Below are positions 1,768-15,627 of a DNA stretch of 64,000 nucleotides, piece by piece. The notes beneath the pieces were generated by a model. The model saw only the letters and a program-made list of their open reading frames with translations, searched no databases and was not told the DNA's origin. The translations under genes and the position numbers were made by a program. The first letter of the stretch is position 1. Every line of letters begins with the position of its first letter. The stretch is taken from positions 1 to 64,000 of IMG/VR virus record IMGVR_UViG_3300002835_000007. One strand, 5' to 3'.

Positions 1768-1796
1768 TTGACAATTAAACGAACTTTTAGTATATT
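1768..1796 (+). promoter_or_regulatory. promoter upstream of leader peptide 1
   Basis: TTGACA-N17-TATATT. Confidence 0.7.
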
Positions 1797-1825
1797 AGTG
1801 TATATTTAATTAATAAAGATAAAAA

Positions 1826-1915
1826 ATGAGAACAATTAATAACATATTTGAGTTTGACTTCTTCGCAGCCGAGGCCGATTTTAGCCTAGGGAGGTCAACC
1901 TATGTATGTAGTTAA
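1826..1915 (+). CDS. attenuator leader peptide 1 (MRTINNIFEFDFFAAEADFSLGRSTYVCS)
   Basis: 29-codon ORF with A-rich start; 12 consecutive F/E/D/A codons; overlaps antiterminator strand AGGTCAACCT 1892-1901. Confidence 0.8.
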   Translation: MRTINNIFEFDFFAAEADFSLGRSTYVCS

Positions 1916-1939
1916 TTGTAAGTAACTATACTATATTTG

Positions 1940-1970
1940 AAAGGTTGACCTAAACAGTCAACCTTTTTTT
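1940..1970 (+). terminator. intrinsic terminator of attenuator 1
   Basis: AAAGGTTGAC-CTAAACA-GTCAACCTTT then T-run; 5' arm also perfectly complementary to 1892-1901. Confidence 0.85.
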
Positions 1971-2007
1971 GTTTATATAGGTTTGAAAAAAAAAAATATT
2001 ACAAAAA

Positions 2008-2128
2008 GTTTGGAAGTTTAAAAAATAGTTCATACATTTGTAAAACAAAATTAAAGAAAACGTTCTTTGAAAGATTAAAAAAAAAAATAAAAAACATTTG
2101 CAAATTAAAAATATTATTTATACATTTG
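2008..2128 (+). promoter_or_regulatory. tandem Bacteroidota-type promoters with boxA-like element
   Basis: TTTG...TACATTTG at 2033-2040 and 2121-2128; GTTCTTTGAAAG at 2062-2073. Confidence 0.7.
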
Positions 2129-2142
2129 TAATATCAAAATAA

Positions 2143-2215
2143 GGACAGATAGCTCAGTTGGTAGAGCATCGCACTGAAGATGCGAGTGTCGGGGGTTCGA
2201 TTCCCTCTCTGTCCA
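2143..2215 (+). tRNA. tRNA-Phe(GAA)
   Basis: GGACAGA/TCTGTCC; TCGCA-CTGAAGA-TGCGA. Confidence 0.96.
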
Positions 2216-2223
2216 CAAAACAA

Positions 2224-2297
2224 CGCCCGTTGGACAAGCGGTTTAAGTCGTCTCCCTTTCACGGAGAAGAGCATGGGTTCGAATCCCATACGGGTGA
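2224..2297 (+). tRNA. tRNA-Glu(TTC)
   Basis: CGCCCGT/ACGGGTG; TCTCC-CTTTCAC-GGAGA. Confidence 0.95.
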
Positions 2298-2346
2298 CCT
2301 TGACTTTTTTGTACCTTGTCGTATATTTATTGTAAAAGATAGATAT

Positions 2347-2988
2347 ATGGCAAGAGCAGAAAAGAAAATACATTACCTATATAAAACTACTTGTTTCATA
2401 ACTGGTAGATGGTATATAGGAATGCACAGCACACATAACTTAGAAGATGGTTATATGGGTAGTGGAAAACGATTAAGGTATTCTATACGTAAGTATGGAG
2501 TTGATAATCATAAAAAAGAGATTTTAGAGTTCTTTGAGAGTAGGGAATTATTAATTGAAGCTGAAATAAAAGCAATCACTGAAGATATGGTTACAGATAA
2601 AAACTGTATGAATCTTAAATTAGGTGGCCAAGGAGGTTTTATTAATGAAGAACATAAACAAAAATTCATAAATTCAGATGGACCTAAAAATTTTGCTAAA
2701 AGGTTGATTGAGGATGAAGAATTTAGATTAAAACATTTTGCGATTATATCTGAAAGGATGAAGAAAACACATGCAAATGGTAAAATTAAATATGATACAT
2801 TCAAAGGTAAACAACATTCAGATGAAACTAAACAAAAAATGAGTGAATCATCTAAAGGTAAAGGTATTGGTGAATCAAATAGTCAATACGGTACTTGTTG
2901 GATAACCAAAGAGAGTGTTAATAAAAAAATTAAAAAAGAAGACCTTGACACATACCTAATTGAAGGATGGGTTAAAGGTAGAAGATAA
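2347..2988 (+). CDS. GIY-YIG homing endonuclease (Seg-like) with NUMOD3 motif
   Basis: YLYKTT...WYIGMHST...YMGSG; FKGKQHSDETKQKMSES; true start ATG 2347. Confidence 0.9.
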   Translation: MARAEKKIHYLYKTTCFITGRWYIGMHSTHNLEDGYMGSGKRLRYSIRKYGVDNHKKEILEFFESRELLIEAEIKAITEDMVTDKNCMNLKLGGQGGFINEEHKQKFINSDGPKNFAKRLIEDEEFRLKHFAIISERMKKTHANGKIKYDTFKGKQHSDETKQKMSESSKGKGIGESNSQYGTCWITKESVNKKIKKEDLDTYLIEGWVKGRR

Positions 2989-3056
2989 ACGCTCGCACTG
3001 ATAGTTACGTATCGGTGGAGAGGATGAGTATGACAATCTGGAAAGACAGATATTAC

Positions 3057-3131
3057 GGTCTATTGGTCCAATGGCTAGGATACGGCACTGTCTATGCTGT
3101 GGTGAGAGTTCAATTCTCTCATAGACCGCCA
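3057..3131 (+). tRNA. tRNA-Asp(GTC)
   Basis: GGTCTAT/ATAGACC-G-CCA; CGGCA-CTGTCTA-TGCTG. Confidence 0.9.
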
Positions 3132-3216
3132 ATTGTAAATACCCAGTGGTTTGGTGGGTATGGATACTAAAAGCTATTAAGAGGTTCGAAACTTGAAAAT
3201 AGTTACCAAACCATAT

Positions 3217-3290
3217 GGGGCAGCATGTACCAAGGCTGGCGTTTCTCCCTTGCAAGGAGAGAGTGGAGAGTTCGATTCTCTTCTGCTCCA
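3217..3290 (+). tRNA. tRNA-Ala(TGC), atypical D arm
   Basis: GGGGCAG/CTGCTCC with G3:U70; TCTCC-CTTGCAA-GGAGA. Confidence 0.8.
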
Positions 3291-3291
3291 C

Positions 3292-3480
3292 ATGGAAAAA
3301 TTTAGTTTTGAGGAAGGTATAGATTATTACCTAGAAAAAGGGAAGATAGTTTATACTGAACGCTATCTAAAAAAAAGAGGGACTTGCTGCGGCTCTGGTT
3401 GCAGACATTGTGTTTTCGACCCACCTTATACGAAAGGTAACAAAGTTTTAAAAGAAAACACAAACAAAAATTTGGATTAA
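3292..3480 (+). CDS. DUF5522-like Cys-rich protein
   Basis: YLKKRGTCCGSGCRHC motif; ATG 3292. Confidence 0.8.
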   Translation: MEKFSFEEGIDYYLEKGKIVYTERYLKKRGTCCGSGCRHCVFDPPYTKGNKVLKENTNKNLD

Positions 3481-3744
3481 TCAATAATTTAATGTACATT
3501 TGTAATATGAAAAAAGAAACTAAAATAAAAGTGTTACAGTTAATCGCTAACTATATAGTTAGCATGTTAGAAAATTCACGTAGTGAAGGTATGTTCTATT
3601 ATTATTTTGAAATTGGTGCAATGGTTAATGCATATGCAATTGAATACCACGACATTTATTTAGATTAAAAAAAAAATTAAAAAACATTTGGATTATTAAA
3701 ATATTATCCATACATTTGTAGTATAAATTTAAAAAGTAAATAAA

Positions 3745-4071
3745 ATGAGTAAGTTTGTAAAAACGTTATCAGCATCTAACGCTGAAATCAAAGAAGCAAG
3801 AGCTAAGATGTTAGCTGACACTACTGTATTAGAAGTAGAATCTTTCGTTCAAGCATTGAAGAAAGAAAAATTAGAGTTGCAAAACAAGTTGGCTAACCTA
3901 ACTGACTTAGCACCAGACAACACGTATAGCTTACGTCCAGGTTCAAAAGATTTTGACGCTAAATTATGGGTACGTGAATTACATTCAACTAGAATGGAAA
4001 TCACTCTTAAAGAAATGGAGTTGGAAGAAGCTCAATCAATCTTCAACGAGTGGTTTGGTGAAGAAAAGTAA
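3745..4071 (+). CDS. coiled-coil hypothetical protein
   Basis: ORF track; promoter TACATTTG 3711-3718. Confidence 0.75.
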   Translation: MSKFVKTLSASNAEIKEARAKMLADTTVLEVESFVQALKKEKLELQNKLANLTDLAPDNTYSLRPGSKDFDAKLWVRELHSTRMEITLKEMELEEAQSIFNEWFGEEK

Positions 4072-4074
4072 TCA

Positions 4075-4710
4075 ATGTATTTTAAATTAGATAAATCTAA
4101 AAAAATGAAAAGAGTTTACATTGCAAAGTCCAATAAGGCGAACCCTAACTTAGTTTCAAGAGTTCGCCAAACTCTTTCCGTGTTTGATGTTCAAATCGTT
4201 GAGTTCACTGGTGGTACTTATTCACATGACTTATTATTATCGTGTGATGAGTTGTATGTCATCCCAGATTTAAGTGGTTCTTTTGATGATGATTATACTA
4301 ATATTTGGTCTGTGTCTATCGGTAAAGGTCTGTATGAACAGATACATGCGTTTCACAATAAAACATCAAATAATGATATTTTTATTGTGACCGATTTTGA
4401 TAACAATGTGGGTGTTGGTGGTTTTTATTATGAAGAAAATGATGATGATTTCTATTCAATTTATATAGAAAATGAAAATGACTATGTTGATTATGCGTAT
4501 CTAACAATTAATACAGAAAACGCAACAATAAATCCATGGGACTTATACCATTTTGTTTTAGAATCAAATGAACTTAAAGATGAATCATGGGTATCAAATG
4601 CATTGAATGAATCAATTGCTGAACATAAAACGTGGAAAGAAAAAGCAGCAAATAAAAAATTTTTATATATTGTTGCAAAAAAACTTGCAAAGTTAAAATA
4701 TAGTTTGTAA
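4075..4710 (+). CDS. hypothetical protein
   Basis: ORF track. Confidence 0.7.
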   Translation: MYFKLDKSKKMKRVYIAKSNKANPNLVSRVRQTLSVFDVQIVEFTGGTYSHDLLLSCDELYVIPDLSGSFDDDYTNIWSVSIGKGLYEQIHAFHNKTSNNDIFIVTDFDNNVGVGGFYYEENDDDFYSIYIENENDYVDYAYLTINTENATINPWDLYHFVLESNELKDESWVSNALNESIAEHKTWKEKAANKKFLYIVAKKLAKLKYSL

Positions 4711-4729
4711 ATTTGTAAAAAAAGTAAAT

Positions 4730-5695
4730 ATGAATAATGAAAGTAAAACAGTCGATATCGATATCGACAAACAAAAATTTGAAGAGTTAATTGATTTGTT
4801 AGATGCGTACACAACTATCGGGTCAAAAGTTGGTCGTGATGTAATTGACGGTCATGAGTGTGAAGTAAGGTTTGTTTTAGTAACCCCAGATTTAGCGGCT
4901 GAAATACTAGAAAATTACAATAGCGAAAATAGACCTTTTTCACAAAGTAATGTTGCTAAATTAGTTAAAGAAATTAATTCTGGTAATTGGTCATTCAATG
5001 GAGAACCAATATCTTTCAACAGTAAAGCTAATGTGTCAAATGGTCAACACAGATTACAAGCAATTGTTTTAACTGGTATTGCATTGAGATTTTTAGTTAC
5101 AACTGGTCTTGACCCTAAAAGTTTTGCTACTATGGATAACGGTAGAAAAAGAACTGGTTCTGATGTTTTAGCTATTGCTGGTGTTGGTAATTATACAACT
5201 GCTGCATCTGTTTGTAAATTTGTTTACTCTTTTAAAAACGGAAATTTTGGTTCTGTTTATAGAGCATCAGAAAGTAGAACTTTGACAAATACTCAAATTG
5301 AAAGTTACTACACAACATTAACAAATGTTGATGAGAGCATTAAATTTGGTGCTGCTATGTCGAAAAAAAGTAATGGGTTATTGAAAGCAACTATTTTAGG
5401 TGGGTTTCATTATTTGTTATCTGAGATTGATGAAGTTTTAGCTGATGAGTTTTTAACTAAACTATCAACTGGTATCGATTTAAAACAAGGTTCACCAATT
5501 ATTTCATTAAGAAATAGATTACTTAAATCTACAACTGATGATAATTACAGAATCACTAGTGAAACTTTAATGAAATTAATCGCATATAGTTGGGAGAAAT
5601 TCGTTAAAAACGAAACTGTTAAGAATCTTAAATTACCAGAAAACTATGAAATTAATCTTTATGGTTCATCAAACCAAAAAACATTAAATTTCTAA
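4730..5695 (+). CDS. ParB/Srx-like N-terminal domain protein
   Basis: VTPDLA..NRP..W.FNGEPI..NGQHRL. Confidence 0.7.
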   Translation: MNNESKTVDIDIDKQKFEELIDLLDAYTTIGSKVGRDVIDGHECEVRFVLVTPDLAAEILENYNSENRPFSQSNVAKLVKEINSGNWSFNGEPISFNSKANVSNGQHRLQAIVLTGIALRFLVTTGLDPKSFATMDNGRKRTGSDVLAIAGVGNYTTAASVCKFVYSFKNGNFGSVYRASESRTLTNTQIESYYTTLTNVDESIKFGAAMSKKSNGLLKATILGGFHYLLSEIDEVLADEFLTKLSTGIDLKQGSPIISLRNRLLKSTTDDNYRITSETLMKLIAYSWEKFVKNETVKNLKLPENYEINLYGSSNQKTLNF

Positions 5696-5731
5696 AAAAA
5701 CGTAACCGAAGATAGTTTTTCGGTTACACTT

Positions 5732-5805
5732 GGACCTCTAGCTCATTCGGTTAGAGCAACTGACTCATAATCAGTAGGTGCTTGGTTCGATTCCAAGGTG
5801 GTCCA
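5732..5805 (+). tRNA. tRNA-CAT, probably Ile2 (lysidine type)
   Basis: GGACC.../...GGTCC-A acceptor typical of Ile2; ACTGA-CTCATAA-TCAGT. Confidence 0.85.
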
Positions 5806-5932
5806 CATTTAGGTGATTCTCAGTAATGGAGATAGTAGAATCTTTAGAGTATTGAACATGAAAAGGCTGGCAAACCGTTAAATTATTTCTCAGTAGTGCC
5901 TCACATAACCACTATGATACTCACTAAATTAC

Positions 5933-6006
5933 GGTTCCGTAGCTCAGCTGGATAGAGCCACGCACTTCTAATGCGTAGGTCACACGTTCGAATCGTGTCG
6001 GAATCA
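5933..6006 (+). tRNA. tRNA-Arg(TCT)
   Basis: GGTTCCG/CGGAATC; ACGCA-CTTCTAA-TGCGT. Confidence 0.95.
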
Positions 6007-6012
6007 CAATAA

Positions 6013-6138
6013 TGGAAGGTAGCCCAATTGGTAGAGGCAGCGGAATGCAAAAAGATTAATCTGTTTTAAAGATTAAGTTCAGCAATTTAAACGCTATTTA
6101 GGAACCGAAAAGTGTTAGTTCGAATCTAACCCTTCCGA
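6013..6138 (+). ncRNA. tRNA body with ~50-nt CAGCAA module inserted in the anticodon arm
   Basis: TGGAAGG/CCTTCCG acceptor, D arm, GTTAG-TTCGAAT-CTAAC T arm; insert TTAATCT/AGATTAA hairpin + GTTCAGCAA. Confidence 0.75.
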
Positions 6139-6446
6139 CAAAAGAAGAGTGAGCAGCATTAGCCAAGTTGGAACGAGTACCAGCGTGAAGGTCAAAAATA
6201 CTCGGCTCATGACTTCTGAAAAAAAGTTTGAAAAAAACTTGCAAATGTAAAATAAAGTTAGTACATTTGTAGTATAGAAAAAGTTCTTTGAAAAGTATTA
6301 GAAATGAGGGTGTTACATTCTTAAATTTCTTTAAAAAAGTTACTAAAAAACTTGACATTTGCTTAAAAATGTCGTATATTAGTAACATAAAAATTGGATT
6401 AATTATCATAAAATAAAAAAGTAAAAAAAAAAAGAAAAAAAAGAGT

Positions 6447-7082
6447 ATGGCAACACCAAAAAGTACACCAGCAAGAAAAGCTTCTGCAAATACAGAAGTA
6501 GTTTTAGGACAAGCAGCAGCACAAATCGCTAAGGCTGTTAACGAATTAAAAGCAGCAACTGCAACAGTTTCTACTTTATCTGACCAGTCAGAGCAATTAA
6601 CTATGTTAGTAGCTAACAAAGAGGAGTCAATCGCTTCATTAGAAGTAGAGTACGCTGAGAAACGTAGACAATATGACGTTGAGTTAGAATTGTCTTTCAA
6701 AGCTAACCAAGAAAGAGTTGTAAATGAGTGGTTACGTTCAAACGGATACACATCTATTTCAACAGCTGACTTAACAACTTTACGTTCTGATTTAGAAACT
6801 TCTAGAACAAACACTGAAGCAACAGTTAAGAAAGAAGTAGCTACTGTAGCTGCAACTTTAAAATCTCAGTACGAGAATGAAATTAAATTAATTCACTCTG
6901 AGAACAAAGCTGTTGCTGCTGAAAACGCTGCAAAAATTGGTACGTTAGCAACACAAAACTCGTTCTTACAAGAACAAGTTACTAAGTTGTACGAACAATT
7001 AGATGCTGAGCGTTCTGCTGGTATCGAAAGAGCGAAAGCTGGGTCAGTAGGTTCAATTAACGTTGCACCAGCTGGTAAGTAA
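6447..7082 (+). CDS. coiled-coil hypothetical protein
   Basis: ORF track; Ala/Glu/Lys-rich heptads. Confidence 0.8.
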   Translation: MATPKSTPARKASANTEVVLGQAAAQIAKAVNELKAATATVSTLSDQSEQLTMLVANKEESIASLEVEYAEKRRQYDVELELSFKANQERVVNEWLRSNGYTSISTADLTTLRSDLETSRTNTEATVKKEVATVAATLKSQYENEIKLIHSENKAVAAENAAKIGTLATQNSFLQEQVTKLYEQLDAERSAGIERAKAGSVGSINVAPAGK

Positions 7083-7126
7083 TTAGCAATGATATTCTAC
7101 GTGGGGAACTGCGTAGAATGTTACAA

Positions 7127-7267
7127 GGGTAAAAAGATTATTTCAGCAACCAAAAATTCAAGCCTTGTTAATGCCGTGGTCGTGGGTTCGAATCCCACAC
7201 TGTCCATGATAATGGGCGGTTAGCTCAGCTGGTTAGAGCACGTATGAAAAAAAGTTAATCTTGTCCC
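7127..7267 (+). ncRNA. circularly permuted tRNA-like RNA (T arm-acceptor-D arm) closed by CAGCAA stem
   Basis: AAGATTA(7134)/TAATCTT(7256); T arm 7182-7198; ACTGTCC(7199)/GGGCGGT(7214); D arm GCTC/GAGC. Confidence 0.8.
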
Positions 7268-7296
7268 CCAAATTGGAGTCCTCTGCTCCTTAAACA

Positions 7297-7437
7297 GAGT
7301 AATTAAAAGATTGTTTCAGCAATTAAACTCAAAAATTGTATGGATAACAAGCGGTCTGGGTTCGAATCCCAGCATGTCCTAACAGAGGTGTGGGCGTGTG
7401 GTGTAATGGTAGCACAAAAAGAGCAATCTTGATACTC
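7297..7437 (+). ncRNA. second circularly permuted tRNA-like RNA closed by CAGCAA stem
   Basis: AAGATTG(7307)/CAATCTT(7424); T arm 7356-7372; CATGTCC(7373)/GGGCGTG(7392); D arm GTG-TAATGGTAG-CAC. Confidence 0.8.
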
Positions 7438-7441
7438 AAAT

Positions 7442-7519
7442 ATGGCGTTAGCTCAGCTGGTAGAGCACTGTTGGTTTTAACTGGCAGATGGGTCGTAGGT
7501 TTGAATCCTACACGCTGTA
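7442..7519 (+). pseudogene. aberrant tRNA (Lys-like loop, 7-bp anticodon stem)
   Basis: Normal D arm and GTAGG-TTTGAAT-CCTAC T arm; CTGTTGG-TTTTAA-CTGGCAG arm; weak acceptor. Confidence 0.6.
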
Positions 7520-7681
7520 CAATGTTTCTTTGTTTTATAAAACAAAGTGGTGGTAGTCTGGGGTGTTAAAACTCTCGGTCCCAAAAAAATAAGGTTGGTA
7601 ATTTACTGTAAAGCTATGGCTTCCTTCAAAAAAGTGGCACTATCGTTTGGTAGTGTCATTTTTTATTTGTACCTTTGTCAA

Positions 7682-8164
7682 ATGAAAACAAAAAGAATTA
7701 GTTTAAATTATCAATTAGGTATGATGGTAGGTGAATACATCGTAGCACTACATTTACCAACACTTAGCACAGATATGCTAAAATCTAGAACAATTATCCA
7801 AGTATCTGAAGAAGAAACTGCTGAATGGGAAACCTTAGAGAAAAAGGAAGAACCATATTGGTTTAACGACAAAAAAAGGGAAGAAGATGAAGAAGGTTAT
7901 TTGAAATCTTTTTATGATAATCGTAAATGGTATCATAAATTGGAAGAAAAATATCTACCAGAAACAATCAAAGTTCCAGTACCTAGAGTAGTACCAACCA
8001 ATATTAATAGATTTGCTGAAGGTATCAAAGATACTTTGTGGAATTGTGATATGTCACATTATAGAATTCAAGAAGGGTTTTTTGAGCAAACAGAAGACAT
8101 TGCATGGTGTTCTTATATTATTTTAACAAGACACATAGAAAAAATTCCAGAAAAGTTTGCATAA
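7682..8164 (+). CDS. hypothetical protein
   Basis: ATG 7682 after TACCTTTG promoter-like site. Confidence 0.7.
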   Translation: MKTKRISLNYQLGMMVGEYIVALHLPTLSTDMLKSRTIIQVSEEETAEWETLEKKEEPYWFNDKKREEDEEGYLKSFYDNRKWYHKLEEKYLPETIKVPVPRVVPTNINRFAEGIKDTLWNCDMSHYRIQEGFFEQTEDIAWCSYIILTRHIEKIPEKFA

Positions 8165-8210
8165 TTGAAATATTATGTATACATTTGTATCAACATTAAA
8201 AATTTAAGAA

Positions 8211-8930: not shown

Positions 8931-8941
8931 AAAGTAGAAAA

Positions 8942-10069
8942 ATGCAAACTAAAACTGAAACAGCAACATCATTTAAAGCGAATTTATCTGAGTTGCCAAT
9001 TTTAAAACACTTTGACCAAAACGAAATCTCTGCAAAGGTAGACAGTTTCCGTAAAGGTGAAAAAGGAATGTTCTGGTTCTTTAAATTAGCAGCACTTATT
9101 GGTGTGGGTTATTTAACATGGACTTATGTATTACCACCAGTTTTCCAAGCAATTGGACAATTCTTAGCTGTAGCAGCAACTGGTGTTTTGATTATAGCTG
9201 GAGTTATTATGGCACCAGTGATTGTGAAAGGGATTCGTTTATTTACACGTTCTTTACACAAAGCACTTATCAAATATGACCCATTTGCTCAGTTGGAAAT
9301 CGAAAGACAAAAAATGCTTGAAAATCAACGTACTTTCAGAACAGCTAAAGGTAACATCGCTTCATTAAAAACTGAGATGGAAGTAGAAGCTGATAAATCT
9401 GAGAAAGAAGCTGAATCTGGTCAAACACGTATCATCTCTTTACAAGGTAAAGCTGAAAAGATTAAGCATGAAATGGATGCTATGGTTCAAAAGATGGGTA
9501 TTGATGCTAAATCAGAAGATGATTATGTAAACAGAGCATCTGAATTACAAAAGATTTTGGCTGAAGCACAACGTGTAGCTAACAAATTAAACCAATCTAA
9601 AGACTTTGTTCAAAAGTATGGTTCACGTGCCGCTATCATGAAGAAAATGGGTCAAAAACTTACAATGGTTGAAACCGTTATGGATATTAAAATTCAAGAC
9701 TTTGATGCAACTATAGATATGTTGAAGAAAGACTATGAGTTCGGTCAAAAATCTAATGCTGCGACTAGTGCTGCTAAATCAGCAATGGGTTTCACAAAAG
9801 GATGGGAATTCGACTATGCATTGGATGTTGTAACATCAACTATTGCTAATGATATCGCAATTACTGCTGGTAACTTGAGAGATATCGAAACACTTACAAG
9901 TAACTACTCATTAGATTCTGATGAATTGTATGCAAACTTGAATGCTGTGGCTGATAAAATCAAAGTTGGTCAAGATATCATACCACAAGCAAAACAATAT
10001 TCAAACCCAGAATATACTCTTTCTCAATCAGATAAAGTTAAATCTGGAGGATTTGGAGAATTATTTTAA
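8942..10069 (+). CDS. membrane-anchored long coiled-coil protein (PspA-like architecture)
   Basis: Two N-terminal hydrophobic helices then ~250 aa coiled coil. Confidence 0.65.
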   Translation: MQTKTETATSFKANLSELPILKHFDQNEISAKVDSFRKGEKGMFWFFKLAALIGVGYLTWTYVLPPVFQAIGQFLAVAATGVLIIAGVIMAPVIVKGIRLFTRSLHKALIKYDPFAQLEIERQKMLENQRTFRTAKGNIASLKTEMEVEADKSEKEAESGQTRIISLQGKAEKIKHEMDAMVQKMGIDAKSEDDYVNRASELQKILAEAQRVANKLNQSKDFVQKYGSRAAIMKKMGQKLTMVETVMDIKIQDFDATIDMLKKDYEFGQKSNAATSAAKSAMGFTKGWEFDYALDVVTSTIANDIAITAGNLRDIETLTSNYSLDSDELYANLNAVADKIKVGQDIIPQAKQYSNPEYTLSQSDKVKSGGFGELF

Positions 10070-10283
10070 AAAAAGTTGCAAAATGTTTGGAGAATTAAAA
10101 TATTCTCCATACATTTGTAATATCAAATTAAATGTTTAACTAAAAAAAAAAGAAAATGTCAAAAACATCGAATCACGTAAAAATCTCTTGTTTGTTAGAG
10201 TGGATTAAATCTATTAAAAAATACAGATTTTAATCTTAGAAACAAAAATAAATTATTAAAGTAAAAAACGAAAAAAGAAAAAA

Positions 10284-12122
10284 ATGGAAAATGTTAATGG
10301 AGTACAAGGTGGTTTAGCGGCAAAATGGAATCGTTTGACCAAATTAAGTAAAATGTTAATTATGGGTGTTGGTTTAGCAATTGTTTTAGCAGTTGTGTAT
10401 ATGGCCGCACCAGGTTTAAGAGTTGCAGTGTCAAAAGAAATGAAAGCGTTAGCAATCAATTCTGACGATTTAAACAACGTAACTAAAGGTGCTGAATTAC
10501 CTTTACCATCTACGGAAGTGTCTAGTAACTTTGACGAAAGTAAGTTGATTAGAATAGCTGAGTACGCATGGAATGGTAACTCTGGTATGATTGTAGCAAA
10601 TGGTGGACCAAGAACAACTGAAGGGTCTCTTATGGAGGCTGCTGATGTAAACTTGGAAATCGTGCGACAAGATATGGTTGGTGGTTTACGTGATATGCAA
10701 ATAAAATTTGTTGATGAATTTAGCAAAGGTGTTGCTTATCCAAAATCACAAAAGTCAGCGTTTGCTGTATCTATCATGGGTGATGGTGTGCCTTTTTACA
10801 TTACAACTACTCAAAAAGCGTTAGATGAGAAGTTTGGTAAAGGTAAATATCACGTAGTTAATATCGGTGCAATCGGTTTATCATATGGGGAGGACAAATT
10901 AATTGGTCCAAAAGTATGGCAAGATAACCCACAAACACTTAGAGGTGCGGTTGTATCATCAGTAATCGGTGATGGTGACTGGGTAGTAGCTGTAAACTAT
11001 GCATCTGCGAATGGTATTCCAGTTAATCCAGACCCAACAACTTTTGATGCTAATGCATTGAACTTTGTACCGTCACAAGATGATGACTTTATCAACTCTG
11101 TAAAAGAATTGATTAAATCACAAAACACTGGATTTACTGTACCTTTGAAAGAAGTTAAAGATGGTAAATTGACTGGTAAGACAATCAACCATAAAATTGA
11201 TGGTGCAACAACATGGACTCCAGGTGATAAAATGGCTTTTGATGCGTTGACTGGGTTTACTGATGTTGTTACAACAAAAGATTTCGTTAACCAAATGGCT
11301 ACATCAATTATCGTAGTGAAAGAATGGGCGATACAACATGAAAAAGAAGTAACGAATATTTTGAAACAAACATATACTGCTTGTAACCAAATTAAACAAT
11401 ACGATAGATGGGCCCGTAAGGCTGCTGAATGTGTTGCAAAAACATACAACTTTGAAACTGCTGATTATTGGTACAAAATGTTCAAAGGACAAAAAGGTAC
11501 TAAAGGTGGTTTAGATTACAATATTGGTGGTACACGTGTATTTAACTATGCTGATGCTATGCAATACTACGGAATCACGGATGGTAATAACAGATATAAA
11601 GCGGTTTACAATCAAGTATCTATGTACTTAACTGACTTGAACCCATGTGGTTTCAACGAAACATGTAAAGATGGTGTTGTGCAATACGAAGATGCTGTTA
11701 ACTTATACTTCTTGAAATCTATTAGTGATGTTGATGCTGGAACTACTCAAAAGTTCAACTATGTTGAGAATAAAACTAAAGTGATGGCAGATGGACAATG
11801 GAACATTAGCTTTGCTACTGCAAGTACAACTATCCAAGGTTCTGAGAAAACGTTAGAGACTATCTACAACTTGTTAATTCAAGCTGAACAAACTAAATTG
11901 AAAGTGATTGGTCATACAGATAATGTTGGTAATCCACAATCTAATATGGTATTGTCTAGAGGTCGTGCTAACTCAGTTGTTGATTATTTGGTTAATCGTG
12001 GGATTCCTAAAGCACGTATTCAATTTGTGGATGGTTTAGGTGATACTAATCCAGTAGCTACAAATGCAACTGCGGCTGGTAAATCGAAAAACAGACGTGT
12101 AGAGATTACATTGTTACAATAA
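10284..12122 (+). CDS. ABC substrate-binding-like protein fused to OmpA C-terminal peptidoglycan-binding domain
   Basis: N-terminal TM; C-terminal GHTDNVG..N..LS..RA..V..YL...NRRVEI. Confidence 0.85.
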   Translation: MENVNGVQGGLAAKWNRLTKLSKMLIMGVGLAIVLAVVYMAAPGLRVAVSKEMKALAINSDDLNNVTKGAELPLPSTEVSSNFDESKLIRIAEYAWNGNSGMIVANGGPRTTEGSLMEAADVNLEIVRQDMVGGLRDMQIKFVDEFSKGVAYPKSQKSAFAVSIMGDGVPFYITTTQKALDEKFGKGKYHVVNIGAIGLSYGEDKLIGPKVWQDNPQTLRGAVVSSVIGDGDWVVAVNYASANGIPVNPDPTTFDANALNFVPSQDDDFINSVKELIKSQNTGFTVPLKEVKDGKLTGKTINHKIDGATTWTPGDKMAFDALTGFTDVVTTKDFVNQMATSIIVVKEWAIQHEKEVTNILKQTYTACNQIKQYDRWARKAAECVAKTYNFETADYWYKMFKGQKGTKGGLDYNIGGTRVFNYADAMQYYGITDGNNRYKAVYNQVSMYLTDLNPCGFNETCKDGVVQYEDAVNLYFLKSISDVDAGTTQKFNYVENKTKVMADGQWNISFATASTTIQGSEKTLETIYNLLIQAEQTKLKVIGHTDNVGNPQSNMVLSRGRANSVVDYLVNRGIPKARIQFVDGLGDTNPVATNATAAGKSKNRRVEITLLQ

Positions 12123-12139
12123 ACTAACATTATTTAATT

Positions 12140-12170
12140 AAAGTCCCTAACTTTGTTAGGGATTTTTTTT
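12140..12170 (+). terminator. intrinsic terminator
   Basis: AAAGTCCCTAAC-TTT-GTTAGGGATTTTTTTT. Confidence 0.75.
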
Positions 12171-12190
12171 GAACTTTAAAAAATAAAAAT

Positions 12191-12961
12191 ATGAAAAATT
12201 TAATTAAACCATTTCAAGAACTTAAAAGTACGTCAAGAGGTACAATCATGTTAGGTTGGTTAGTAGCTATACTTACATTTTGGACCTTGAATATGTTTGG
12301 AACATCACATATGTTTCCAACACCAACACAAGTTATCCATGGATTTGGTGACTTATGGGCTGAAGGATTAGTTGTTCACATAGTTAGTTCAATTGCGTTA
12401 TGTGCACATGCTGTATTCTTATCAGTGATTATATCATTGGTTATCGCATATTCAACAGCAATTCCAATTATGAAGCCAGTAGGTACATTTATATCTAAAT
12501 TAAGATATCTTCCATTGACTGGTATTGCTTTTTATTTAGCTATCATTATTAACGATGCTAGAAGTCTTCAAGTATGGGTGCTTGTAGTGTTCATGACAAC
12601 GTTTCTAACGACTTCTCTTATTCAAATGATACAAGATATCCCCAAAGAAGAATTGGACCACGCAAAAACGCTAGGATGCAATCGTTGGGAGATTTTATGG
12701 GAAGTAGTTATCAAAGGTAGATTAGATTACGTGTTAGAGTTGGTAAGACAAAACTTAGCAATTGTATGGATGATGCTTGTAACGGTTGAGTCTATATTAG
12801 CAGCAGCTGGTGGTATGGGATTCTTAATCAAAAATAGTGACAAGTTAGGTGACAATGGTAGAGTAATTGCATTACAAATTATAATTGTAGTTGTAGGGTT
12901 ATCATTGGACTTTATCATCACTAAATTACGTAAATTAATATTCAGATATTCAAATTATTAA
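12191..12961 (+). CDS. ABC transporter permease (TauC/SsuC-like)
   Basis: FPTP..V; EAA-loop-like DHAKTLGCNRW; WMMLVTVE...GMGFLI. Confidence 0.88.
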   Translation: MKNLIKPFQELKSTSRGTIMLGWLVAILTFWTLNMFGTSHMFPTPTQVIHGFGDLWAEGLVVHIVSSIALCAHAVFLSVIISLVIAYSTAIPIMKPVGTFISKLRYLPLTGIAFYLAIIINDARSLQVWVLVVFMTTFLTTSLIQMIQDIPKEELDHAKTLGCNRWEILWEVVIKGRLDYVLELVRQNLAIVWMMLVTVESILAAAGGMGFLIKNSDKLGDNGRVIALQIIIVVVGLSLDFIITKLRKLIFRYSNY

Positions 12962-12964
12962 GAC

Positions 12965-13786
12965 ATGAGTTATAGAGAATTAGATACAATATTATACGTT
13001 GATAAGATTAGCGTTGGGTATGAAGGAAAAACAATTCTTAAAGATATTTCAATCATTGAGAAAAATATAGTAAGAGATGGTCACGATTCCACTGGACAAA
13101 CAATTGCGGTGTTAGGTCGTTCTGGTAGAGGTAAATCTACATTGTTCAAAGCGTTGACTGGATTGGTTAAACCAATGTCTGGCCAGATTTTGATAAGTGA
13201 TATGGCTACAGAAGTTGCAGATGATGCAAAAATATTGGCTGAAGGTGATGTAGGGTTTGTTGACCAAAAATACACTTTGTTCAGACATAAAACAGTATAT
13301 CAGATTTGTCAATATGCATTAAGAAAAAGTAAAACGACAAAACAAGAGAAAGATAAGTTGATTACTGAGTTTTTAACTGAATGGGGTTTATTAGAACACA
13401 AAGATAAATACTCATGTGAGTTATCTGGTGGTCAAAGACAAAGAACTGCAATCATTGAGCAAATGTTATCATCTAAACATTTTATGATTTTGGATGAACC
13501 ATTCTCTGGATTGGACGTTGGAAACATTGAGAAAGTTAAAACATCTTTCCAAAAGATTTTGGATGCTGACGAATATAACACAATCATATTTTCAACACAC
13601 GATATCAGATTGGCTGCTGAATTGGCTGATAGTATTTATATTATTGGTAACCCAGAGGGTACAACTGAATATTCAACAGTCTTAAAACACTATGATTTAA
13701 AGAAAATGGGATTAGCTTGGACACCATATGGTGAGGGTCATAGAAAAGTGGTTGCTGACATAAAAGAAATATTATTAAAATCGTAA
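12965..13786 (+). CDS. ABC transporter ATPase (TauB/SsuB-like)
   Basis: GRSGRGKST, LSGGQRQR, ILDEPFSGLD, STHD. Confidence 0.93.
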   Translation: MSYRELDTILYVDKISVGYEGKTILKDISIIEKNIVRDGHDSTGQTIAVLGRSGRGKSTLFKALTGLVKPMSGQILISDMATEVADDAKILAEGDVGFVDQKYTLFRHKTVYQICQYALRKSKTTKQEKDKLITEFLTEWGLLEHKDKYSCELSGGQRQRTAIIEQMLSSKHFMILDEPFSGLDVGNIEKVKTSFQKILDADEYNTIIFSTHDIRLAAELADSIYIIGNPEGTTEYSTVLKHYDLKKMGLAWTPYGEGHRKVVADIKEILLKS

Positions 13787-14023
13787 CAATGATAAATTTT
13801 TTTGGTAAATTAGGTCTAATTGCACATGGTCAATTAAGATTGTTTAAAAATCTCTTCTATGAGATACAGTTGTTTGGTCGTATTAGAGATTTTAAAGATG
13901 GTATTACATTCTTTGAGTTTAAATGTAATTTAGACAGATATAAGAGTGAACATTCACCATCTTTTCAATTAGAATTAACAATATTAAACTTATATAATCA
14001 TATATGGGTTTATCAAAACAATT

Positions 14024-14350
14024 TTGAAGATGATAATAGTAAGTGATAGGTTTTTAAGGTTCTTGACATTCTTTTTAGGTGGTGGTCAATTACCAGCAGC
14101 TATGGCGTTCTACCCTTTTGTTATATTGAATAGCAAAGTGGTAGCAACGCCAGAGTTGATAAACCATGAAAGGATTCACCTAAGACAACAAATCGAAATG
14201 TTAATTATACCATTCTATATTTGGTATCTTATTGAGTATTATAGAAAGGGGTATTATAATGTTTCTTTTGAAAAAGAAGCGTATGCTAACGATAAAAACT
14301 TTAATTATCTTAAAAAAAGACGTATATTTAGTTTTATTAGATATTTATAA
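14024..14350 (+). CDS. HExxH-motif hypothetical protein
   Basis: LINHERIHLRQQ...FEKEAY. Confidence 0.7.
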   Translation: MKMIIVSDRFLRFLTFFLGGGQLPAAMAFYPFVILNSKVVATPELINHERIHLRQQIEMLIIPFYIWYLIEYYRKGYYNVSFEKEAYANDKNFNYLKKRRIFSFIRYL

Positions 14351-14468
14351 TAAAGACTTTGTTCATAAGAACAACTTTTAAGCAGAGTTAAGGTTGTTGT
14401 TTTTAATTAAAAAAAAATGGATAGTGAATGTAACAGTAAGCAGAAAAGTTGTGGGGACAGTTTGCCTC

Positions 14469-15272
14469 ATGATAGCGACTTTTCTGAACCCTTTAGGGTT
14501 CGACATACTGGTTTTCAAACTGATGCAGTTAACCAACGATTATTGGAATACAATGTACATTCTATATGGATTGGCATTTGTGTTCTTATTGCTGTCGCAC
14601 TTATTTTTTAGATTAAAAAAAAGAGTTTTAGGAAACTTATTTGTAACAATAGCATTATTTGTTAATCCATTGGGTTATGATGTTGTTGTTTACTGTATTA
14701 CGTTATTAACAAAAAATTATTGGATGACTATGGCGATTATGTATGCGTTAGCATTTGTTTTTTTTGGATTTTTTATGTACCTTTACAAAATGAATCCAAT
14801 CAAACTCATTAAAGACAAGATTATTGGGTTACATGAAAAATTTTTAAAAAAAAAAGTAAAAATGAAAACATTTGATGAACTATTTGACGAATTCTTTAAT
14901 AAAAAGAATTCTGAAGAACCAAAAAAGAAATCTAAACCTTCAAGAGAAGAATTTAGTGACGGATTATCTAAATTAATAAACATTTTATCTAGTGCTAAGC
15001 AAATAGATGATGAAGATGAAAAATTTAAAATAGACAATGAATATGGTGAACCATCTAGAGTTGAGTATTTCAATGAGGATGAATTGTATTTTAAAAAAAC
15101 AATATGGGAAGTTGAAGATGGTGAAATTGTTAAATTAGAAGTGTCAGATGCACCATTTGATGAAGACGAACACAAATCTTTAGAAGAATTATTAGAAGAA
15201 GCTATTGCTGCTGAAGAGTACGAAAAAGCTGCTGAAATAAGAGATGAATTAAATAAAATTAAAAATAATTAA
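14469..15272 (+). CDS. duplicated membrane domain in frame with a UVR-domain protein (possibly two genes; second ATG 14862)
   Basis: Two NPLG(F/Y)D...YW..M..Y.LAFVF repeats; C-terminal LEEAIAAEEYEKAAEIRDEL. Confidence 0.65.
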   Translation: MIATFLNPLGFDILVFKLMQLTNDYWNTMYILYGLAFVFLLLSHLFFRLKKRVLGNLFVTIALFVNPLGYDVVVYCITLLTKNYWMTMAIMYALAFVFFGFFMYLYKMNPIKLIKDKIIGLHEKFLKKKVKMKTFDELFDEFFNKKNSEEPKKKSKPSREEFSDGLSKLINILSSAKQIDDEDEKFKIDNEYGEPSRVEYFNEDELYFKKTIWEVEDGEIVKLEVSDAPFDEDEHKSLEELLEEAIAAEEYEKAAEIRDELNKIKNN

Positions 15273-15291
15273 AAAAAAAATTACAAAAAAC

Positions 15292-15322
15292 TTGACAAAT
15301 GTAAAAAAAGTTCGTACATTTG
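15292..15322 (+). promoter_or_regulatory. promoter upstream of leader peptide 2
   Basis: TTGACA-N17-TACATTTG. Confidence 0.75.
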
Positions 15323-15378
15323 TAGTATAATTTTGAATTTTAAAAAAAAACGATATATTTAATTAATACAAAAGCGAA

Positions 15379-15474
15379 ATGAAAACAACAGTTACTACAT
15401 ATCAACCGAAACAAACGCAAGGCGGAAAGCCTAGTGTATCGGGTATGTTATATCTGTTGAGTAACGAAGAATAA
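15379..15474 (+). CDS. attenuator leader peptide 2 (MKTTVTTYQPKQTQGGKPSVSGMLYLLSNEE)
   Basis: 31-codon ORF; K/T/Y/Q/P/G block; overlaps antiterminator strand ATCGGGT 15438-15444. Confidence 0.8.
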   Translation: MKTTVTTYQPKQTQGGKPSVSGMLYLLSNEE

Positions 15475-15498: not shown

Positions 15499-15531
15499 AA
15501 ACCCGATTTCAGAAATGACATCGGGTTTTTT
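15499..15531 (+). terminator. intrinsic terminator of attenuator 2
   Basis: AAACCCGAT-T-TCA-GAAA-TGA-C-ATCGGGTTT then T-run. Confidence 0.85.
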
Positions 15532-15627
15532 GTTTTAGGTACCTATGCCTCTTAAAAAATAGGAACGTTATTTGACATGTTGGTTTATTTTGGGTTGTAC
15601 ATATACAATAGTAGGAATGTAAATTAT

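What the first reader, a model, noticed from the sequence alone, without database searches (positions are those of the whole stretch)
1801..15474. The two attenuators share a common blueprint (a tRNA-demand-sensing cassette family)
Seen in sequence: both leaders are preceded by the identical 15-mer TATATTTAATTAATA (1801-1815; 15354-15368). Both have an AGGC...GCCTAG hairpin at the end of the sensing codons (about 1872-1889; 15420-15434), then the antiterminator strand followed by ATGT, a stop codon inside a long imperfect hairpin, and the terminator. Both are followed by a boxA-like site. The stem sequences differ but the pairings are kept. Inference: a duplicated regulatory cassette re-tuned for each tRNA array. 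I do not know of leader-peptide attenuation being described for phage tRNA arrays.
Basis: partly seen in the sequence, partly recalled or inferred. Interest (0 to 1): 0.85.

Follow-up and report, generated by a model that had tools for sequence, protein, structure and literature searches.

The report
Leader-peptide attenuators controlling phage tRNA arrays
In front of each block of tRNA genes this large phage has a tiny gene whose codons call for just the amino acids that the block's tRNAs carry, followed by a terminator/antiterminator switch; this probably lets the phage make those tRNAs only when they run short, a form of tRNA gene control I found described nowhere.

Summary
The window has two cassettes, at 1768-1970 and 15292-15531. 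Each has a Bacteroidota-type promoter, a shared AU-rich box, a 29-31-codon ORF and a trp-type set of alternative hairpins ending in an intrinsic terminator. Leader 1 has 12 consecutive codons using only Phe, Glu, Asp and Ala, and the tRNAs downstream are Phe, Glu, Asp, Ala. Leader 2 has 15 of 16 codons for Thr, Tyr, Gln, Pro, Lys and Gly, and the tRNAs downstream are Pro, Gln, Tyr, Thr, Gly, Gly, Lys, Lys.

It is rich in Leu, Cys and Val and is followed by Cys, Val, Val, Leu, Leu. A fourth class (Ile, His, Met, Ser, Asn, Trp, Arg) completes a partition of all 20 amino acids.

I found 47 distinct cassettes in uncultivated phage contigs. A 635-kb megaphage has six more, with a different partition that again mirrors each array. 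Antiterminator and terminator covary. None was found in bacterial genomes, in Rfam or in the literature searched.

Best reading: ribosome-mediated attenuation that couples tRNA-array transcription to the supply of the cognate charged tRNAs. No expression data exist. The boxA-like sites are not above chance.

The parts
1768..1798 (+). Promoter of cassette 1: TTGACA at 1768-1773, then 17 nt, then TATATTAG at 1791-1798 (Bacteroidota TAnnTTTG-like -7 box with one mismatch)
   Evidence: -7 consensus from PMC9723704 and PMC7366714
1801..1815 (+). AU-rich box TATATTTAATTAATA, identical to 15354-15368. The core TATATTTAAT is conserved across the family. Role unknown; it may be the transcription start region or a translation enhancer in the 5' UTR
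1826..1915 (+). Leader ORF 1: 29 codons plus stop
1847..1882 (+). Sensing run of leader 1, codons 8-19 (FEFDFFAAEADF). It uses only Phe, Glu, Asp and Ala codons, the four specificities of the tRNAs downstream
   Evidence: 12 of 12; next-best of 506 short ORFs scores 9
1832..1919 (+). Long imperfect 1:2 hairpin (anti-antiterminator, possibly a pause hairpin). It includes the small AGGC/GCCT hairpin at 1872-1887 and holds the stop codon at 1913-1915
   Evidence: minimum-energy fold, z = -5.0
1892..1901 (+). Antiterminator strand (segment 2), AGGTCAACCT, codons 23-26, followed by ATGTATGT
   Evidence: duplex with 1942-1951: -17.6 kcal/mol against -8.4 for foreign terminator arms
1939..1970 (+). 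Intrinsic terminator (segments 3:4). Arms at 1940-1949 and 1957-1966, T-run at 1964-1970. The 5' arm (1942-1951) is the partner of the antiterminator
2010..2128 (+). Two further promoter-like sites (2010-2040 and 2098-2128) and a boxA-like CGTTCTTTGAAA (2061-2072) between the terminator and tRNA-Phe. Not part of the core cassette. If active, they give transcription that bypasses the attenuator
   Evidence: absent in relatives where the tRNA follows the terminator directly
2143..3291 (+). Regulated array 1: tRNA-Phe(GAA) 2143-2216, Glu(UUC) 2224-2299, Asp(GUC) 3057-3131, Ala(UGC) 3220-3291. A GIY-YIG/NUMOD3 homing-endonuclease-like ORF at 2347-2988 splits the array
15292..15322 (+). Promoter of cassette 2: TTGACA at 15292-15297 and TACATTTG at 15315-15322. 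The extended form CTTGACAAAT-N13-GTACATTTGTA is almost confined to these cassettes in IMG/VR
15354..15368 (+). AU-rich box TATATTTAATTAATA, second copy
15379..15474 (+). Leader ORF 2: 31 codons plus stop
15382..15432 (+). Sensing run of leader 2, codons 2-18 (KTTVTTYQPKQTQGGKP). All but one codon are Thr, Tyr, Gln, Pro, Lys or Gly, the six specificities downstream. Gly is given as both GGC and GGA, matching tRNA-Gly(ACC) and tRNA-Gly(UCC)
15397..15449 (+). Conserved 1:2 helix: ACATATC at 15397-15403 pairs with GGTATGTT at 15442-15449. It encloses the AGGC/GCCT hairpin at 15420-15432 and explains the conserved ATGT after the antiterminator
15438..15444 (+). Antiterminator strand (segment 2), ATCGGGT, codons 20-22
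   Evidence: 85.7% of cells paired, 4 of 7 pairs with compensatory change in 12 relatives
15499..15531 (+). Intrinsic terminator (segments 3:4). Arms at 15499-15511 and 15516-15528, T-run at 15526-15531
15560..15590 (+). Block conserved among relatives; it contains the weak boxA-like CGTTATTTGACA at 15566-15577. Function unknown
15627..16831 (+). Regulated array 2: tRNA-Pro, Gln, Tyr, Thr, Gly(UCC), Gly(ACC), Lys, Lys. There is an internal promoter-like site at 15844-15874
569..1208 (+). tRNA-Val, Val, Leu(UAA), Leu(UAG): the distal part of a third array. Its leader (Leu/Cys/Val-rich) and tRNA-Cys lie just upstream of window position 1 in relatives L010/L026

Best explanation
Each cassette is a ribosome-mediated (leader-peptide) transcription attenuator of the trp/his/ilv type, placed in front of a phage tRNA array.

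Proposed sequence of events. Transcription starts at a strong Bacteroidota-type promoter and a ribosome translates the short leader ORF. The ORF's central run consists of the codons read by the tRNAs encoded downstream. If the aminoacyl-tRNAs for those codons are plentiful, the ribosome runs on into segment 2 and covers it; segments 3 and 4 then form the terminator and the transcript ends before the array. If any of those tRNAs is scarce, the ribosome stalls inside the run. Segment 1 is then covered and segment 2 is free, so 2:3 (the antiterminator) forms and RNA polymerase reads through into the tRNA genes. As the phage tRNAs accumulate, the leader is translated quickly again and termination resumes. 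That is a negative feedback loop holding each group of phage tRNAs at the level translation demands. With no ribosome at all, 1:2 and 3:4 form and transcription terminates.

Shown here: the anatomy, the codon/tRNA correspondence, the covariation of the helices, and the family-wide conservation.

Inferred: that the ORF is translated, that stalling controls read-through, and that the physiological signal is tRNA shortage. Possible causes of such a shortage are host tRNA loss or cleavage during infection, or a codon-usage mismatch.
For: Anatomy in the window:
- Both cassettes have a promoter, a short ORF, 1:2, 2:3 and 3:4 segments, and a T-run.
- Fold z-scores are -5.0 and -5.6.

Codon match:
- Leader 1 has 12 of 12 consecutive codons in {F,E,D,A} (P about 4e-8). 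Leader 2 has 15 of 16 in {P,Q,Y,T,G,K} (P about 2e-7).
- They are the two top-scoring of 506 short ORFs in the window.
- The match reaches codon level. Both codon boxes of Leu, Arg, Ser and Gly appear where both isoacceptor tRNAs are encoded.

Ribosome-mask folding:
- On nascent RNA, the antiterminator can still form with the A site at nearly every codon up to 19-20 in leader 1 and up to codon 17 in leader 2.
- Beyond that, to the stop codon in leader 1 and to codon 27 in leader 2, segment 2 is covered.
- The sensing runs end at about that boundary.

Family:
- 47 distinct cassettes fall into four classes whose sensing sets partition all 20 amino acids. Each class sits in front of the matching array.
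- The leader-by-array matrix has a diagonal of 0.62-0.81 and off-diagonal values of at most 0.19. The observed own-array fraction is 0.76; the maximum of 10,000 permutations was 0.47.
- The promoter-only search did not use peptide content. It returned 23 stretches, giving 20 distinct sites. Eighteen of these are cassettes, one (L232) is not, and two had too little sequence to tell; only one cassette lacked enough downstream sequence to show its array.

Natural swap experiment:
- Megaphage LR745206.1 has six cassettes with a different partition: H/K/F/W; S/R; Y/E; I/G/A; N/L/M/T/V/I/R; P/Q/D.
- Each mirrors its own array. They were found by a scan that ignored peptide content.

Covariation:
- A cassette's own antiterminator/terminator duplex averages -13.5 kcal/mol, against -8.8 for foreign arms (Wilcoxon p = 2.6e-9; 42 distinct pairs).
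- In class 2, 4 of 7 antiterminator pairs and 5 of 13 terminator pairs show compensatory changes. Slid controls reach at most 55-60% paired, against 82-86% observed.

Selection on the amino acid:
- Ser codons switch between TCG and AGT among class-4 relatives. There are synonymous changes in Glu, Thr and Pro codons.

Plausibility in the host phylum:
- Leader-peptide attenuation is reported for amino-acid biosynthesis operons in Flavobacterium (PMC9723704).
Against: There are no transcript, ribosome or tRNA data: the phages are uncultivated and the host is only inferred from the promoter type.

In the window, promoter-like sites lie between terminator and tRNAs (2010-2040, 2098-2128) and inside array 2 (15844-15874). 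The attenuator may therefore only modulate expression here.

Thermodynamic folding of the nascent RNA without a ribosome also prefers 2:3. Termination in the untranslated state therefore relies on kinetic formation of 1:2.

In leader 2 the stop codon lies 26 nt past segment 2, so a ribosome at the stop no longer covers it.

The 1:2 helix is conserved but shows no compensatory changes.

A few cassettes have weak predicted antiterminators, for example L027 and L278.

Some arrays hold tRNAs or ORFs that are not reflected in the leader.
Confidence: 0.85

Rival explanations
1. Same attenuator hardware, different signal. The cassettes report general translation or amino-acid status, that is starvation of the infected cell, rather than tRNA abundance. 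They would serve as a timing or economy device, for example switching tRNA synthesis with the state of the host, and not as feedback on the phage tRNAs themselves.
For: Classical attenuators respond to charged-tRNA levels, which fall on amino-acid starvation. Nothing in the sequence separates low charging from low tRNA. The mixed codon runs sample many amino acids.
Against: Making more tRNA does not relieve amino-acid starvation. A general sensor would not need each leader to list exactly its own array's specificities and isoacceptor codon boxes. It would also not need to be re-partitioned when arrays are re-partitioned, as in the megaphage.
Confidence: 0.08
2. An RNA-only or factor-dependent switch. 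The short ORFs are not translated, and the alternative hairpins are set by a protein or by direct tRNA binding, as in T-box leaders.
For: Terminator/antiterminator pairs are common to riboswitches, T-boxes and protein-dependent attenuators. The conserved AU-rich box and the conserved small GC hairpin could be binding sites.
Against: No Rfam family, T-box included, matches the leaders even at E-value up to 1. The ORFs are conserved as reading frames, with synonymous changes and box-switching Ser codons. Only translation explains why runs of 12-17 codons list the array's amino acids in 50+ cassettes.
Confidence: 0.03
3. Coincidence or hitch-hiking. The ORFs are functional micropeptides or spurious, the hairpins are ordinary terminators of upstream units, and the composition match comes from common descent of leader and array.
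For: The class-3 peptide looks like a hydrophobic signal or lipobox peptide when viewed alone. Most cassettes within a class are related by descent, so they are not independent observations.
Against: Each leader has its own promoter upstream, and the terminator lies between leader and tRNAs. Four classes here and six differently partitioned classes in a distant megaphage all show the match. Antiterminator complementarity is kept through sequence turnover. In the window the two leaders are extreme outliers among 506 short ORFs.
Confidence: 0.02

Closest known systems
Leader-peptide attenuators of amino-acid biosynthetic operons (trpL, hisL, leuL, pheL; multivalent thrL and ilvL) in Proteobacteria, with predicted counterparts in Bacteroidota
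   Same: A promoter-proximal short ORF with a run of regulatory codons. Overlapping 1:2, 2:3 and 3:4 hairpins ending in an intrinsic terminator. The position of the stalled ribosome chooses between antiterminator and terminator. Mixed-codon (multivalent) leaders, as in ilv and thr.
   Different: The regulated genes are tRNAs, not enzymes. The codon run lists up to seven amino acids and both isoacceptor codon boxes. The cassettes are phage-encoded and occur as a set that together covers all 20 amino acids. The loop closes on tRNA supply rather than on amino-acid synthesis. No Rfam leader family matches.
pheM-pheST attenuator of E. coli (leader peptide controlling phenylalanyl-tRNA synthetase)
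   Same: Leader-peptide attenuation applied to a component of the translation apparatus, sensing the cognate charged tRNA. This comparison rests on my own knowledge, not on a test here.
   Different: It controls a synthetase gene, senses a single amino acid, and is cellular.
T-box riboswitches
   Same: They sense tRNA status and act through terminator/antiterminator alternatives upstream of translation-related genes.
   Different: A T-box binds uncharged tRNA directly through a specifier codon and a conserved T-box sequence, with no translation. No such elements or Rfam hits occur here, and T-boxes do not control tRNA genes.
Known control of bacterial tRNA and rRNA operons (promoter-level growth-rate and stringent control; boxA/Nus antitermination)
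   Same: The target genes are stable-RNA operons. A boxA-like sequence is present at 2061-2072.
   Different: Those systems act at initiation or as processive antitermination and do not read codons. The boxA-like sites here are not above chance and are not conserved in the family.
Phage tRNA arrays (T4, T5, jumbo phages and megaphages)
   Same: Clustered tRNA genes in large phages, thought to compensate for codon usage or for host tRNA loss or cleavage. This comparison rests on my own knowledge.
   Different: I found no description of any sensing element in front of such arrays.

Membership tests
Ribosome-mediated (leader-peptide) transcription attenuator | A short ORF with a start codon and a usable initiation context in the 5' leader, conserved as a reading frame | tested here: met
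   ORFs at 1826-1915 and 15379-15474 with A-rich upstream sequence. The frame is kept in 47 relatives, with synonymous and Ser box-switching changes.
Ribosome-mediated (leader-peptide) transcription attenuator | A run of regulatory codons cognate to what the operon supplies | tested here: met
   12 of 12 and 15 of 16 codons in the window. Matrix diagonal 0.62-0.81 against at most 0.19 off-diagonal. The megaphage's different partition also matches its arrays.
Ribosome-mediated (leader-peptide) transcription attenuator | An intrinsic terminator between the leader ORF and the structural genes | tested here: met
   1939-1970 and 15499-15531. In class 2, 5 of 13 terminator pairs show compensatory change.
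Ribosome-mediated (leader-peptide) transcription attenuator | An antiterminator that shares a strand with the terminator and is mutually exclusive with it | tested here: met
   1892-1901 pairs with 1942-1951, and 15438-15444 with 15501-15507. Own versus foreign duplex is -13.5 against -8.8 kcal/mol, p = 2.6e-9. 4 of 7 pairs are compensatory and slid controls are low.
Ribosome-mediated (leader-peptide) transcription attenuator | An upstream 1:2 (anti-antiterminator or pause) hairpin that overlaps the regulatory codons | tested here: inconclusive
   It is present in the minimum-energy folds and conserved in class 2 (ACAUAUC pairing with GGUAUGUU). The pairs are almost invariant, so there is no covariation support. 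For nascent RNA the thermodynamic fold prefers 2:3.
Ribosome-mediated (leader-peptide) transcription attenuator | Geometry: a ribosome stalled in the run leaves segment 2 free, and a ribosome past the run covers it | tested here: met
   Footprint-masked folding. On nascent RNA, 2:3 forms for A-site codons up to 19-20 in leader 1 (except codon 18) and up to 17 in leader 2. It does not form beyond that, up to the stop codon in leader 1 and up to codon 27 in leader 2.
Ribosome-mediated (leader-peptide) transcription attenuator | Read-through rises when the cognate charged tRNA is limiting (functional proof) | not testable with these tools
   The phages are uncultivated and no transcript or ribosome data are available here.
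T-box riboswitch | Specifier loop, conserved T-box sequence and antiterminator bulge, recognisable by the Rfam T-box model | tested here: not met
   The Rfam scan of 1-18000 at E-value up to 1 gives no T-box hit or any other cis-regulatory hit on the leaders.
boxA/Nus processive antitermination site (as part of the shared blueprint) | A conserved boxA sequence downstream of each attenuator, more frequent than chance | tested here: not met
   The match is exact at 2061 but has 2 mismatches at 15566. There are 14 sites against 11.2 expected at up to 2 mismatches. It is absent where the tRNA follows the terminator directly.

The most novel reading that the evidence does not exclude
Large Bacteroidota phages, including 635-kb megaphages, run their tRNA genes under closed-loop control. 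Every array carries a 'table-of-contents' leader peptide listing the codons its tRNAs read. The set of leaders in one genome samples all 20 amino acids. The phage thereby measures, codon group by codon group, whether the infected cell's decoding capacity is sufficient, and tops up only the missing tRNAs. This would be the first leader-peptide attenuation of tRNA genes, and the first cis-acting sensor described for viral tRNA expression.
Probability: 0.75. Interest if true: 0.92.

Novelty: new variant of a known kind. Interest (0 to 1): 0.9.

Why it matters
Why phages carry tRNA arrays, and how they use them, is an open question. The usual proposals are codon-usage compensation and escape from host tRNA cleavage or degradation.

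A sensor that reads the very codons served by the downstream tRNAs makes the question testable. It implies that shortage of particular charged tRNAs is a condition these phages regularly meet and respond to.

It also extends a textbook mechanism, attenuation, to a new class of target: stable RNA genes. In bacteria these genes are known to be controlled at the promoter, not by codon reading.

The cassettes are compact (about 200 nt), modular and naturally 'programmable' by codon content. They could therefore serve as reporters of the availability of chosen tRNAs in Bacteroidota.

The leader peptide also gives a simple annotation rule for finding and delimiting tRNA operons in huge phage genomes.

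Tried and rejected
- **Close relatives in INPHARED.** Megablast of window 1-8000 gave only tRNA-sized hits. Blastn of both window leaders and tblastn of two leader peptides gave nothing.
- **Bacteroides phage DAC19.** It shares a tRNA-Leu fragment but has three tRNAs and no cassette.
- **Rfam at a permissive threshold.** No leader, T-box or riboswitch hit.
- **Metagenome scan with the promoter+box pattern.** Most hits of that loose pattern in both collections were chance matches with no ORF or tRNA.
- **Genome-contig scan with the class-4 17-mer.** All 22 hits were chance matches inside unrelated genes, and none was a leader.
- **A class-4 leader in the window.** None found. The window's own contig gave no class-3 or class-4 hit. 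The flanks of the relative's class-4 locus do not match the window.
- **MAFFT alignment of class 1.** It put the terminator stems out of register, so I did not count pairs on it. I used the own-versus-foreign duplex test instead.
- **boxA as a shared element.** Rejected as not above chance.
I did not build one. Exact-pattern scans plus a composition-blind terminator/ORF/tRNA scan already recovered more than 50 cassettes.
- **Literature.** Seven full-text searches found nothing on leader-peptide control of tRNA genes. Subscription-only papers are not covered.

Full report
**What the window is**

The 64-kb window is AT-rich (about 31% G+C). Nearly all ORFs are on the + strand. It is the first 64 kb of IMG/VR contig 3300002835_000007, which is 205,931 bp long.

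It has no close relative among 50,697 deposited phage genomes. It encodes 19 tRNAs within the first 17 kb, an RNase II/R homologue, a NAMPT homologue and other large-phage genes.

Promoter-like sites of the form TTG-N(17-23)-TAnnTTTG precede many genes (27 on the + strand). TAnnTTTG is the sigma-A -7 box of Bacteroidota (PMC9723704, PMC7366714), so the host is probably a member of that phylum. This is an inference.

**Checking the observation**

The 15-mer occurs exactly twice, at the stated coordinates. The two leader ORFs are 1826-1915 and 15379-15474.

Each cassette has the following parts:
- a promoter (1768-1798; 15292-15322);
- the AU-rich box;
- the ORF;
- a small AGGC/GCCT hairpin at the end of the codon run (1872-1887; 15420-15432);
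- an antiterminator strand inside the ORF (1892-1901; 15438-15444), followed by (T)ATGT;
- an intrinsic terminator (1939-1970; 15499-15531).

The antiterminator strand is complementary to the 5' arm of the terminator. In cassette 1 this is a perfect 10 bp, in cassette 2 it is 7 bp. Both leaders fold much better than dinucleotide shuffles (z = -5.0 and -5.6).

The window has 13 terminator-like sites on the + strand. Only these two combine a codon-matched short ORF with downstream tRNA genes.

The boxA-like element is the one weak point. It is exact at 2061-2072 but has two mismatches at 15566-15577. At that stringency such sites are no more frequent than in shuffled sequence (14 against 11.2).

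**The key fact: the leaders list the downstream tRNAs**

Leader 1, codons 8-19, reads FEFDFFAAEADF. The next tRNA genes are Phe, Glu, Asp, Ala.

Leader 2, codons 2-18, reads KTTVTTYQPKQTQGGKP. The next tRNA genes are Pro, Gln, Tyr, Thr, Gly, Gly, Lys, Lys.

With the window's own amino-acid frequencies, the chance of 12 of 12 and of at least 15 of 16 is about 4e-8 and 2e-7. Among all 506 short ATG ORFs on both strands, the two leaders score 12 and 15. The next best score 9 and 11.

The one odd codon in leader 2 (Val, codon 5) is the variable position among relatives, which have Val, Phe, Tyr or Gly there.

Relatives L010/L026 are 91-93% identical to the window over its first 2.2 kb. About 450 nt upstream of the point where the window begins, they carry a third cassette with the same promoter, box, terminator and antiterminator. 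Its run reads ALLLCLLVVNVV. It is followed by tRNA-Cys and then Val, Val, Leu, Leu. The window's contig simply starts after it.

**A family**

I ran pattern scans of IMG/VR with the promoter, and with short conserved cores of each class. They recovered 47 distinct cassettes: 11 of class 1, 12 of class 2, 5 of class 3 and 19 of class 4. They come from contigs of up to 362 kb.

Class 4 is absent from the window. Its run reads INIHMISISNWRRNSH, and it precedes arrays of His, Trp, Ser, Ile, Met, Asn, Arg and Ser tRNAs.

The four sensing sets are {F,E,D,A}, {T,Y,Q,P,K,G}, {C,L,V} and {I,H,M,S,N,W,R}. Together they partition all 20 amino acids.

The promoter-only search did not use peptide content. 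It returned 23 stretches, giving 20 distinct sites. Eighteen of these are cassettes, one (L232) is not, and two had too little sequence to tell. Only one cassette lacked enough downstream sequence to show its array.

I computed the fraction of leader codons 5-20 that are served by an array:
- a cassette's own class: 0.62-0.81;
- other classes: at most 0.19;
- observed mean: 0.76, against a maximum of 0.47 in 10,000 random re-pairings.

The match holds at codon level:
- Leu appears as UUA and CUN where tRNA-Leu(UAA) and (UAG) are encoded.
- Arg appears as AGA and CGC with tRNA-Arg(UCU) and (ACG).
- Ser appears as UCG and AGU with tRNA-Ser(UGA) and (GCU).
- Gly appears as GGC and GGA with two tRNA-Gly species.

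**An independent natural experiment**

A weak blastn hit led to LR745206.1, a 634,780-bp uncultured megaphage. I scanned it piece by piece with a procedure that ignores peptide content. The procedure looks for a terminator within 1.5 kb upstream of a tRNA, preceded by a short ORF. Seven units met these criteria. One of them, at 522535, shows no such run and is probably spurious; the other six are cassettes. Their arrays are composed differently, and each leader follows its own array:

| Leader run | tRNAs downstream |
|---|---|
| THKNFSKSHKWF | His, Phe, His, Phe, Trp, Lys x4 |
| TSKSSSRSSS | Arg, Ser |
| SYESYYEE | Glu x4, Tyr x2 |
| ISIAVIGNGAGAI | Ile, Gly, Met(cat), Gly, Gly, Ala |
| NLNMTMNLTLNVVNITL.NIR | Asn, Arg, Leu, Val, Ile, Thr, Met |
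| APVNPQPQDQDP | Pro, Asp x4, Pro, Gln x3 |

The diagonal mean is 0.61 and the off-diagonal mean is 0.11. When arrays are re-partitioned, the leaders are re-partitioned with them. This argues for function rather than mere co-inheritance.

**Structure and covariation**

Every cassette has an antiterminator strand at about codons 20-25. Across the family there are 42 distinct antiterminator/terminator-arm combinations.

A cassette's upstream region pairs with its own terminator arm at -13.5 kcal/mol on average. With unrelated arms the value is -8.8 (Wilcoxon p = 2.6e-9). The cassettes are phylogenetically related, so this p-value is indicative only.

On a 12-sequence class-2 alignment:
- The antiterminator helix is 85.7% paired, with compensatory changes in 4 of 7 pairs. 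Slid controls are at most 55% paired.
- The terminator helix is 81.6% paired, with 5 of 13 pairs compensatory.
- RNAalifold adds a conserved 1:2 helix, ACAUAUC pairing with GGUAUGUU. It overlaps the 3' end of the antiterminator strand and explains the conserved ATGT. Its pairs hardly vary, so it gains no support from covariation.

**How it most likely works**

I folded the RNA with a ribosome footprint masked at each codon. On nascent RNA, 2:3 can form with the A site at nearly every codon up to 19-20 of leader 1 and up to codon 17 of leader 2. It cannot form once the ribosome has moved past that point, up to the stop codon in leader 1 and up to codon 27 in leader 2. The sensing runs end at about that boundary.

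This is the trp/his logic. A stall in the run gives the antiterminator and read-through into the tRNAs. Smooth translation gives the terminator.

The codons are those read by the regulated tRNAs, so the loop is self-limiting. The multivalent design, as in ilv and thr, means that shortage of any one tRNA of the group opens the whole array.

The small GC hairpin after the run may be the pause signal that synchronises polymerase and ribosome. This is an inference.

What depletes the tRNAs is unknown. Candidates are host tRNA cleavage or turnover during infection and codon-usage mismatch. The phage encodes an RNase II/R homologue.

**Caveats**

- There are no expression data, and all members are uncultivated.
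- In the window, extra promoter-like sites sit between terminator 1 and tRNA-Phe and inside array 2. Control here may be partial. In many relatives the first tRNA starts about 10 nt after the T-run.
- Without a ribosome, thermodynamics alone favours 2:3 on nascent RNA, so 1:2 must act kinetically. In leader 2 the stop codon lies well past segment 2.
- A few members have weak predicted antiterminators.

**Comparison with what is known, and novelty**

The hardware meets the defining features of leader-peptide attenuators, except that functional proof is lacking and the 1:2 helix is inconclusive. It is not a T-box and matches no Rfam family.

The class-4 core is absent from representative genomes of 185,579 bacterial and archaeal species: all 22 matches were chance matches.

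Seven full-text searches of about 8.4 million papers and preprints found no description of leader-peptide attenuation of tRNA genes, in phages or in cells. Subscription-only literature is not covered.

I therefore rate it a new variant of a known kind. The mechanism is familiar. The target (tRNA arrays), the owner (phages) and the design (composite 'table-of-contents' leaders that jointly cover the genetic code) are new.

**Verdict**

My confidence in the attenuator mechanism is 0.85, and my interest score is 0.9.

Noticed in passing
window 6013-6138, 7104-7209, 7213-7380, 15880-15957, 16424-16560: tRNA-like pieces (T-arm and acceptor-like ends) carry 50-80-nt inserts with a shared motif, AAAGAT-N3-4-TT(C/G)CAGCAA. 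The motif gives 6 hits at up to 2 mismatches against 1.8 expected. ARAGORN calls one of them an intron-bearing tRNA, and Rfam gives only weak tRNA, YrlA or permuted-tmRNA hits. They could be intron-bearing or split/permuted tRNA genes, or another structured RNA. They lie where the window's missing His/Trp/Ser/Asn/Ile tRNAs might be expected.
   Followed up: partly
window 7442-7520 (also L010 5307-5378): tRNA genes with an 8-nt anticodon loop (four-base anticodons 'ttta' and 'gtga' by ARAGORN). They may be frameshift-suppressor-like or degenerate tRNAs.
   Followed up: no
window 2347-2988: A GIY-YIG/NUMOD3 homing-endonuclease-like ORF with its own promoter-like site (2300-2327) splits the Phe-Glu | Asp-Ala array. 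Relatives L010/L026 have extra tRNAs there instead. A related copy sits in the relatives' class-2 array.
   Followed up: partly
window 1801-1815 and 15354-15368; all family members: The AU-rich box TATATTTAAT(TAATA) is conserved in the 5' UTR of nearly all cassettes, at a variable distance from the -7 box. Its role is unknown. It could be the transcription start region, an S1-type translation enhancer in a phylum that lacks Shine-Dalgarno sequences, or a factor site.
   Followed up: partly
leaders of classes 1 and 4 and of megaphage LR745206.1: A shared N-terminus, M-(K/R/N)-T-I-(N/T)-N-I, occurs in leaders with otherwise unrelated sensing runs. This suggests common descent, or a requirement for A-rich early codons for initiation.
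   Followed up: no
window 42488-44473 and 25440-27059: The phage encodes an RNase II/R homologue (RNB, CSD2 and S1 domains; E = 6e-108) and a NAMPT homologue. The RNase could bear on host RNA turnover, and hence on why tRNA supply needs sensing.
   Followed up: no
L039, L043, L066 (class-4 cassettes): In several class-4 members a small protein gene (starting MEE(E)LVR...) lies between the attenuator terminator and the first tRNA. The attenuator there also controls a protein of unknown function.
   Followed up: no
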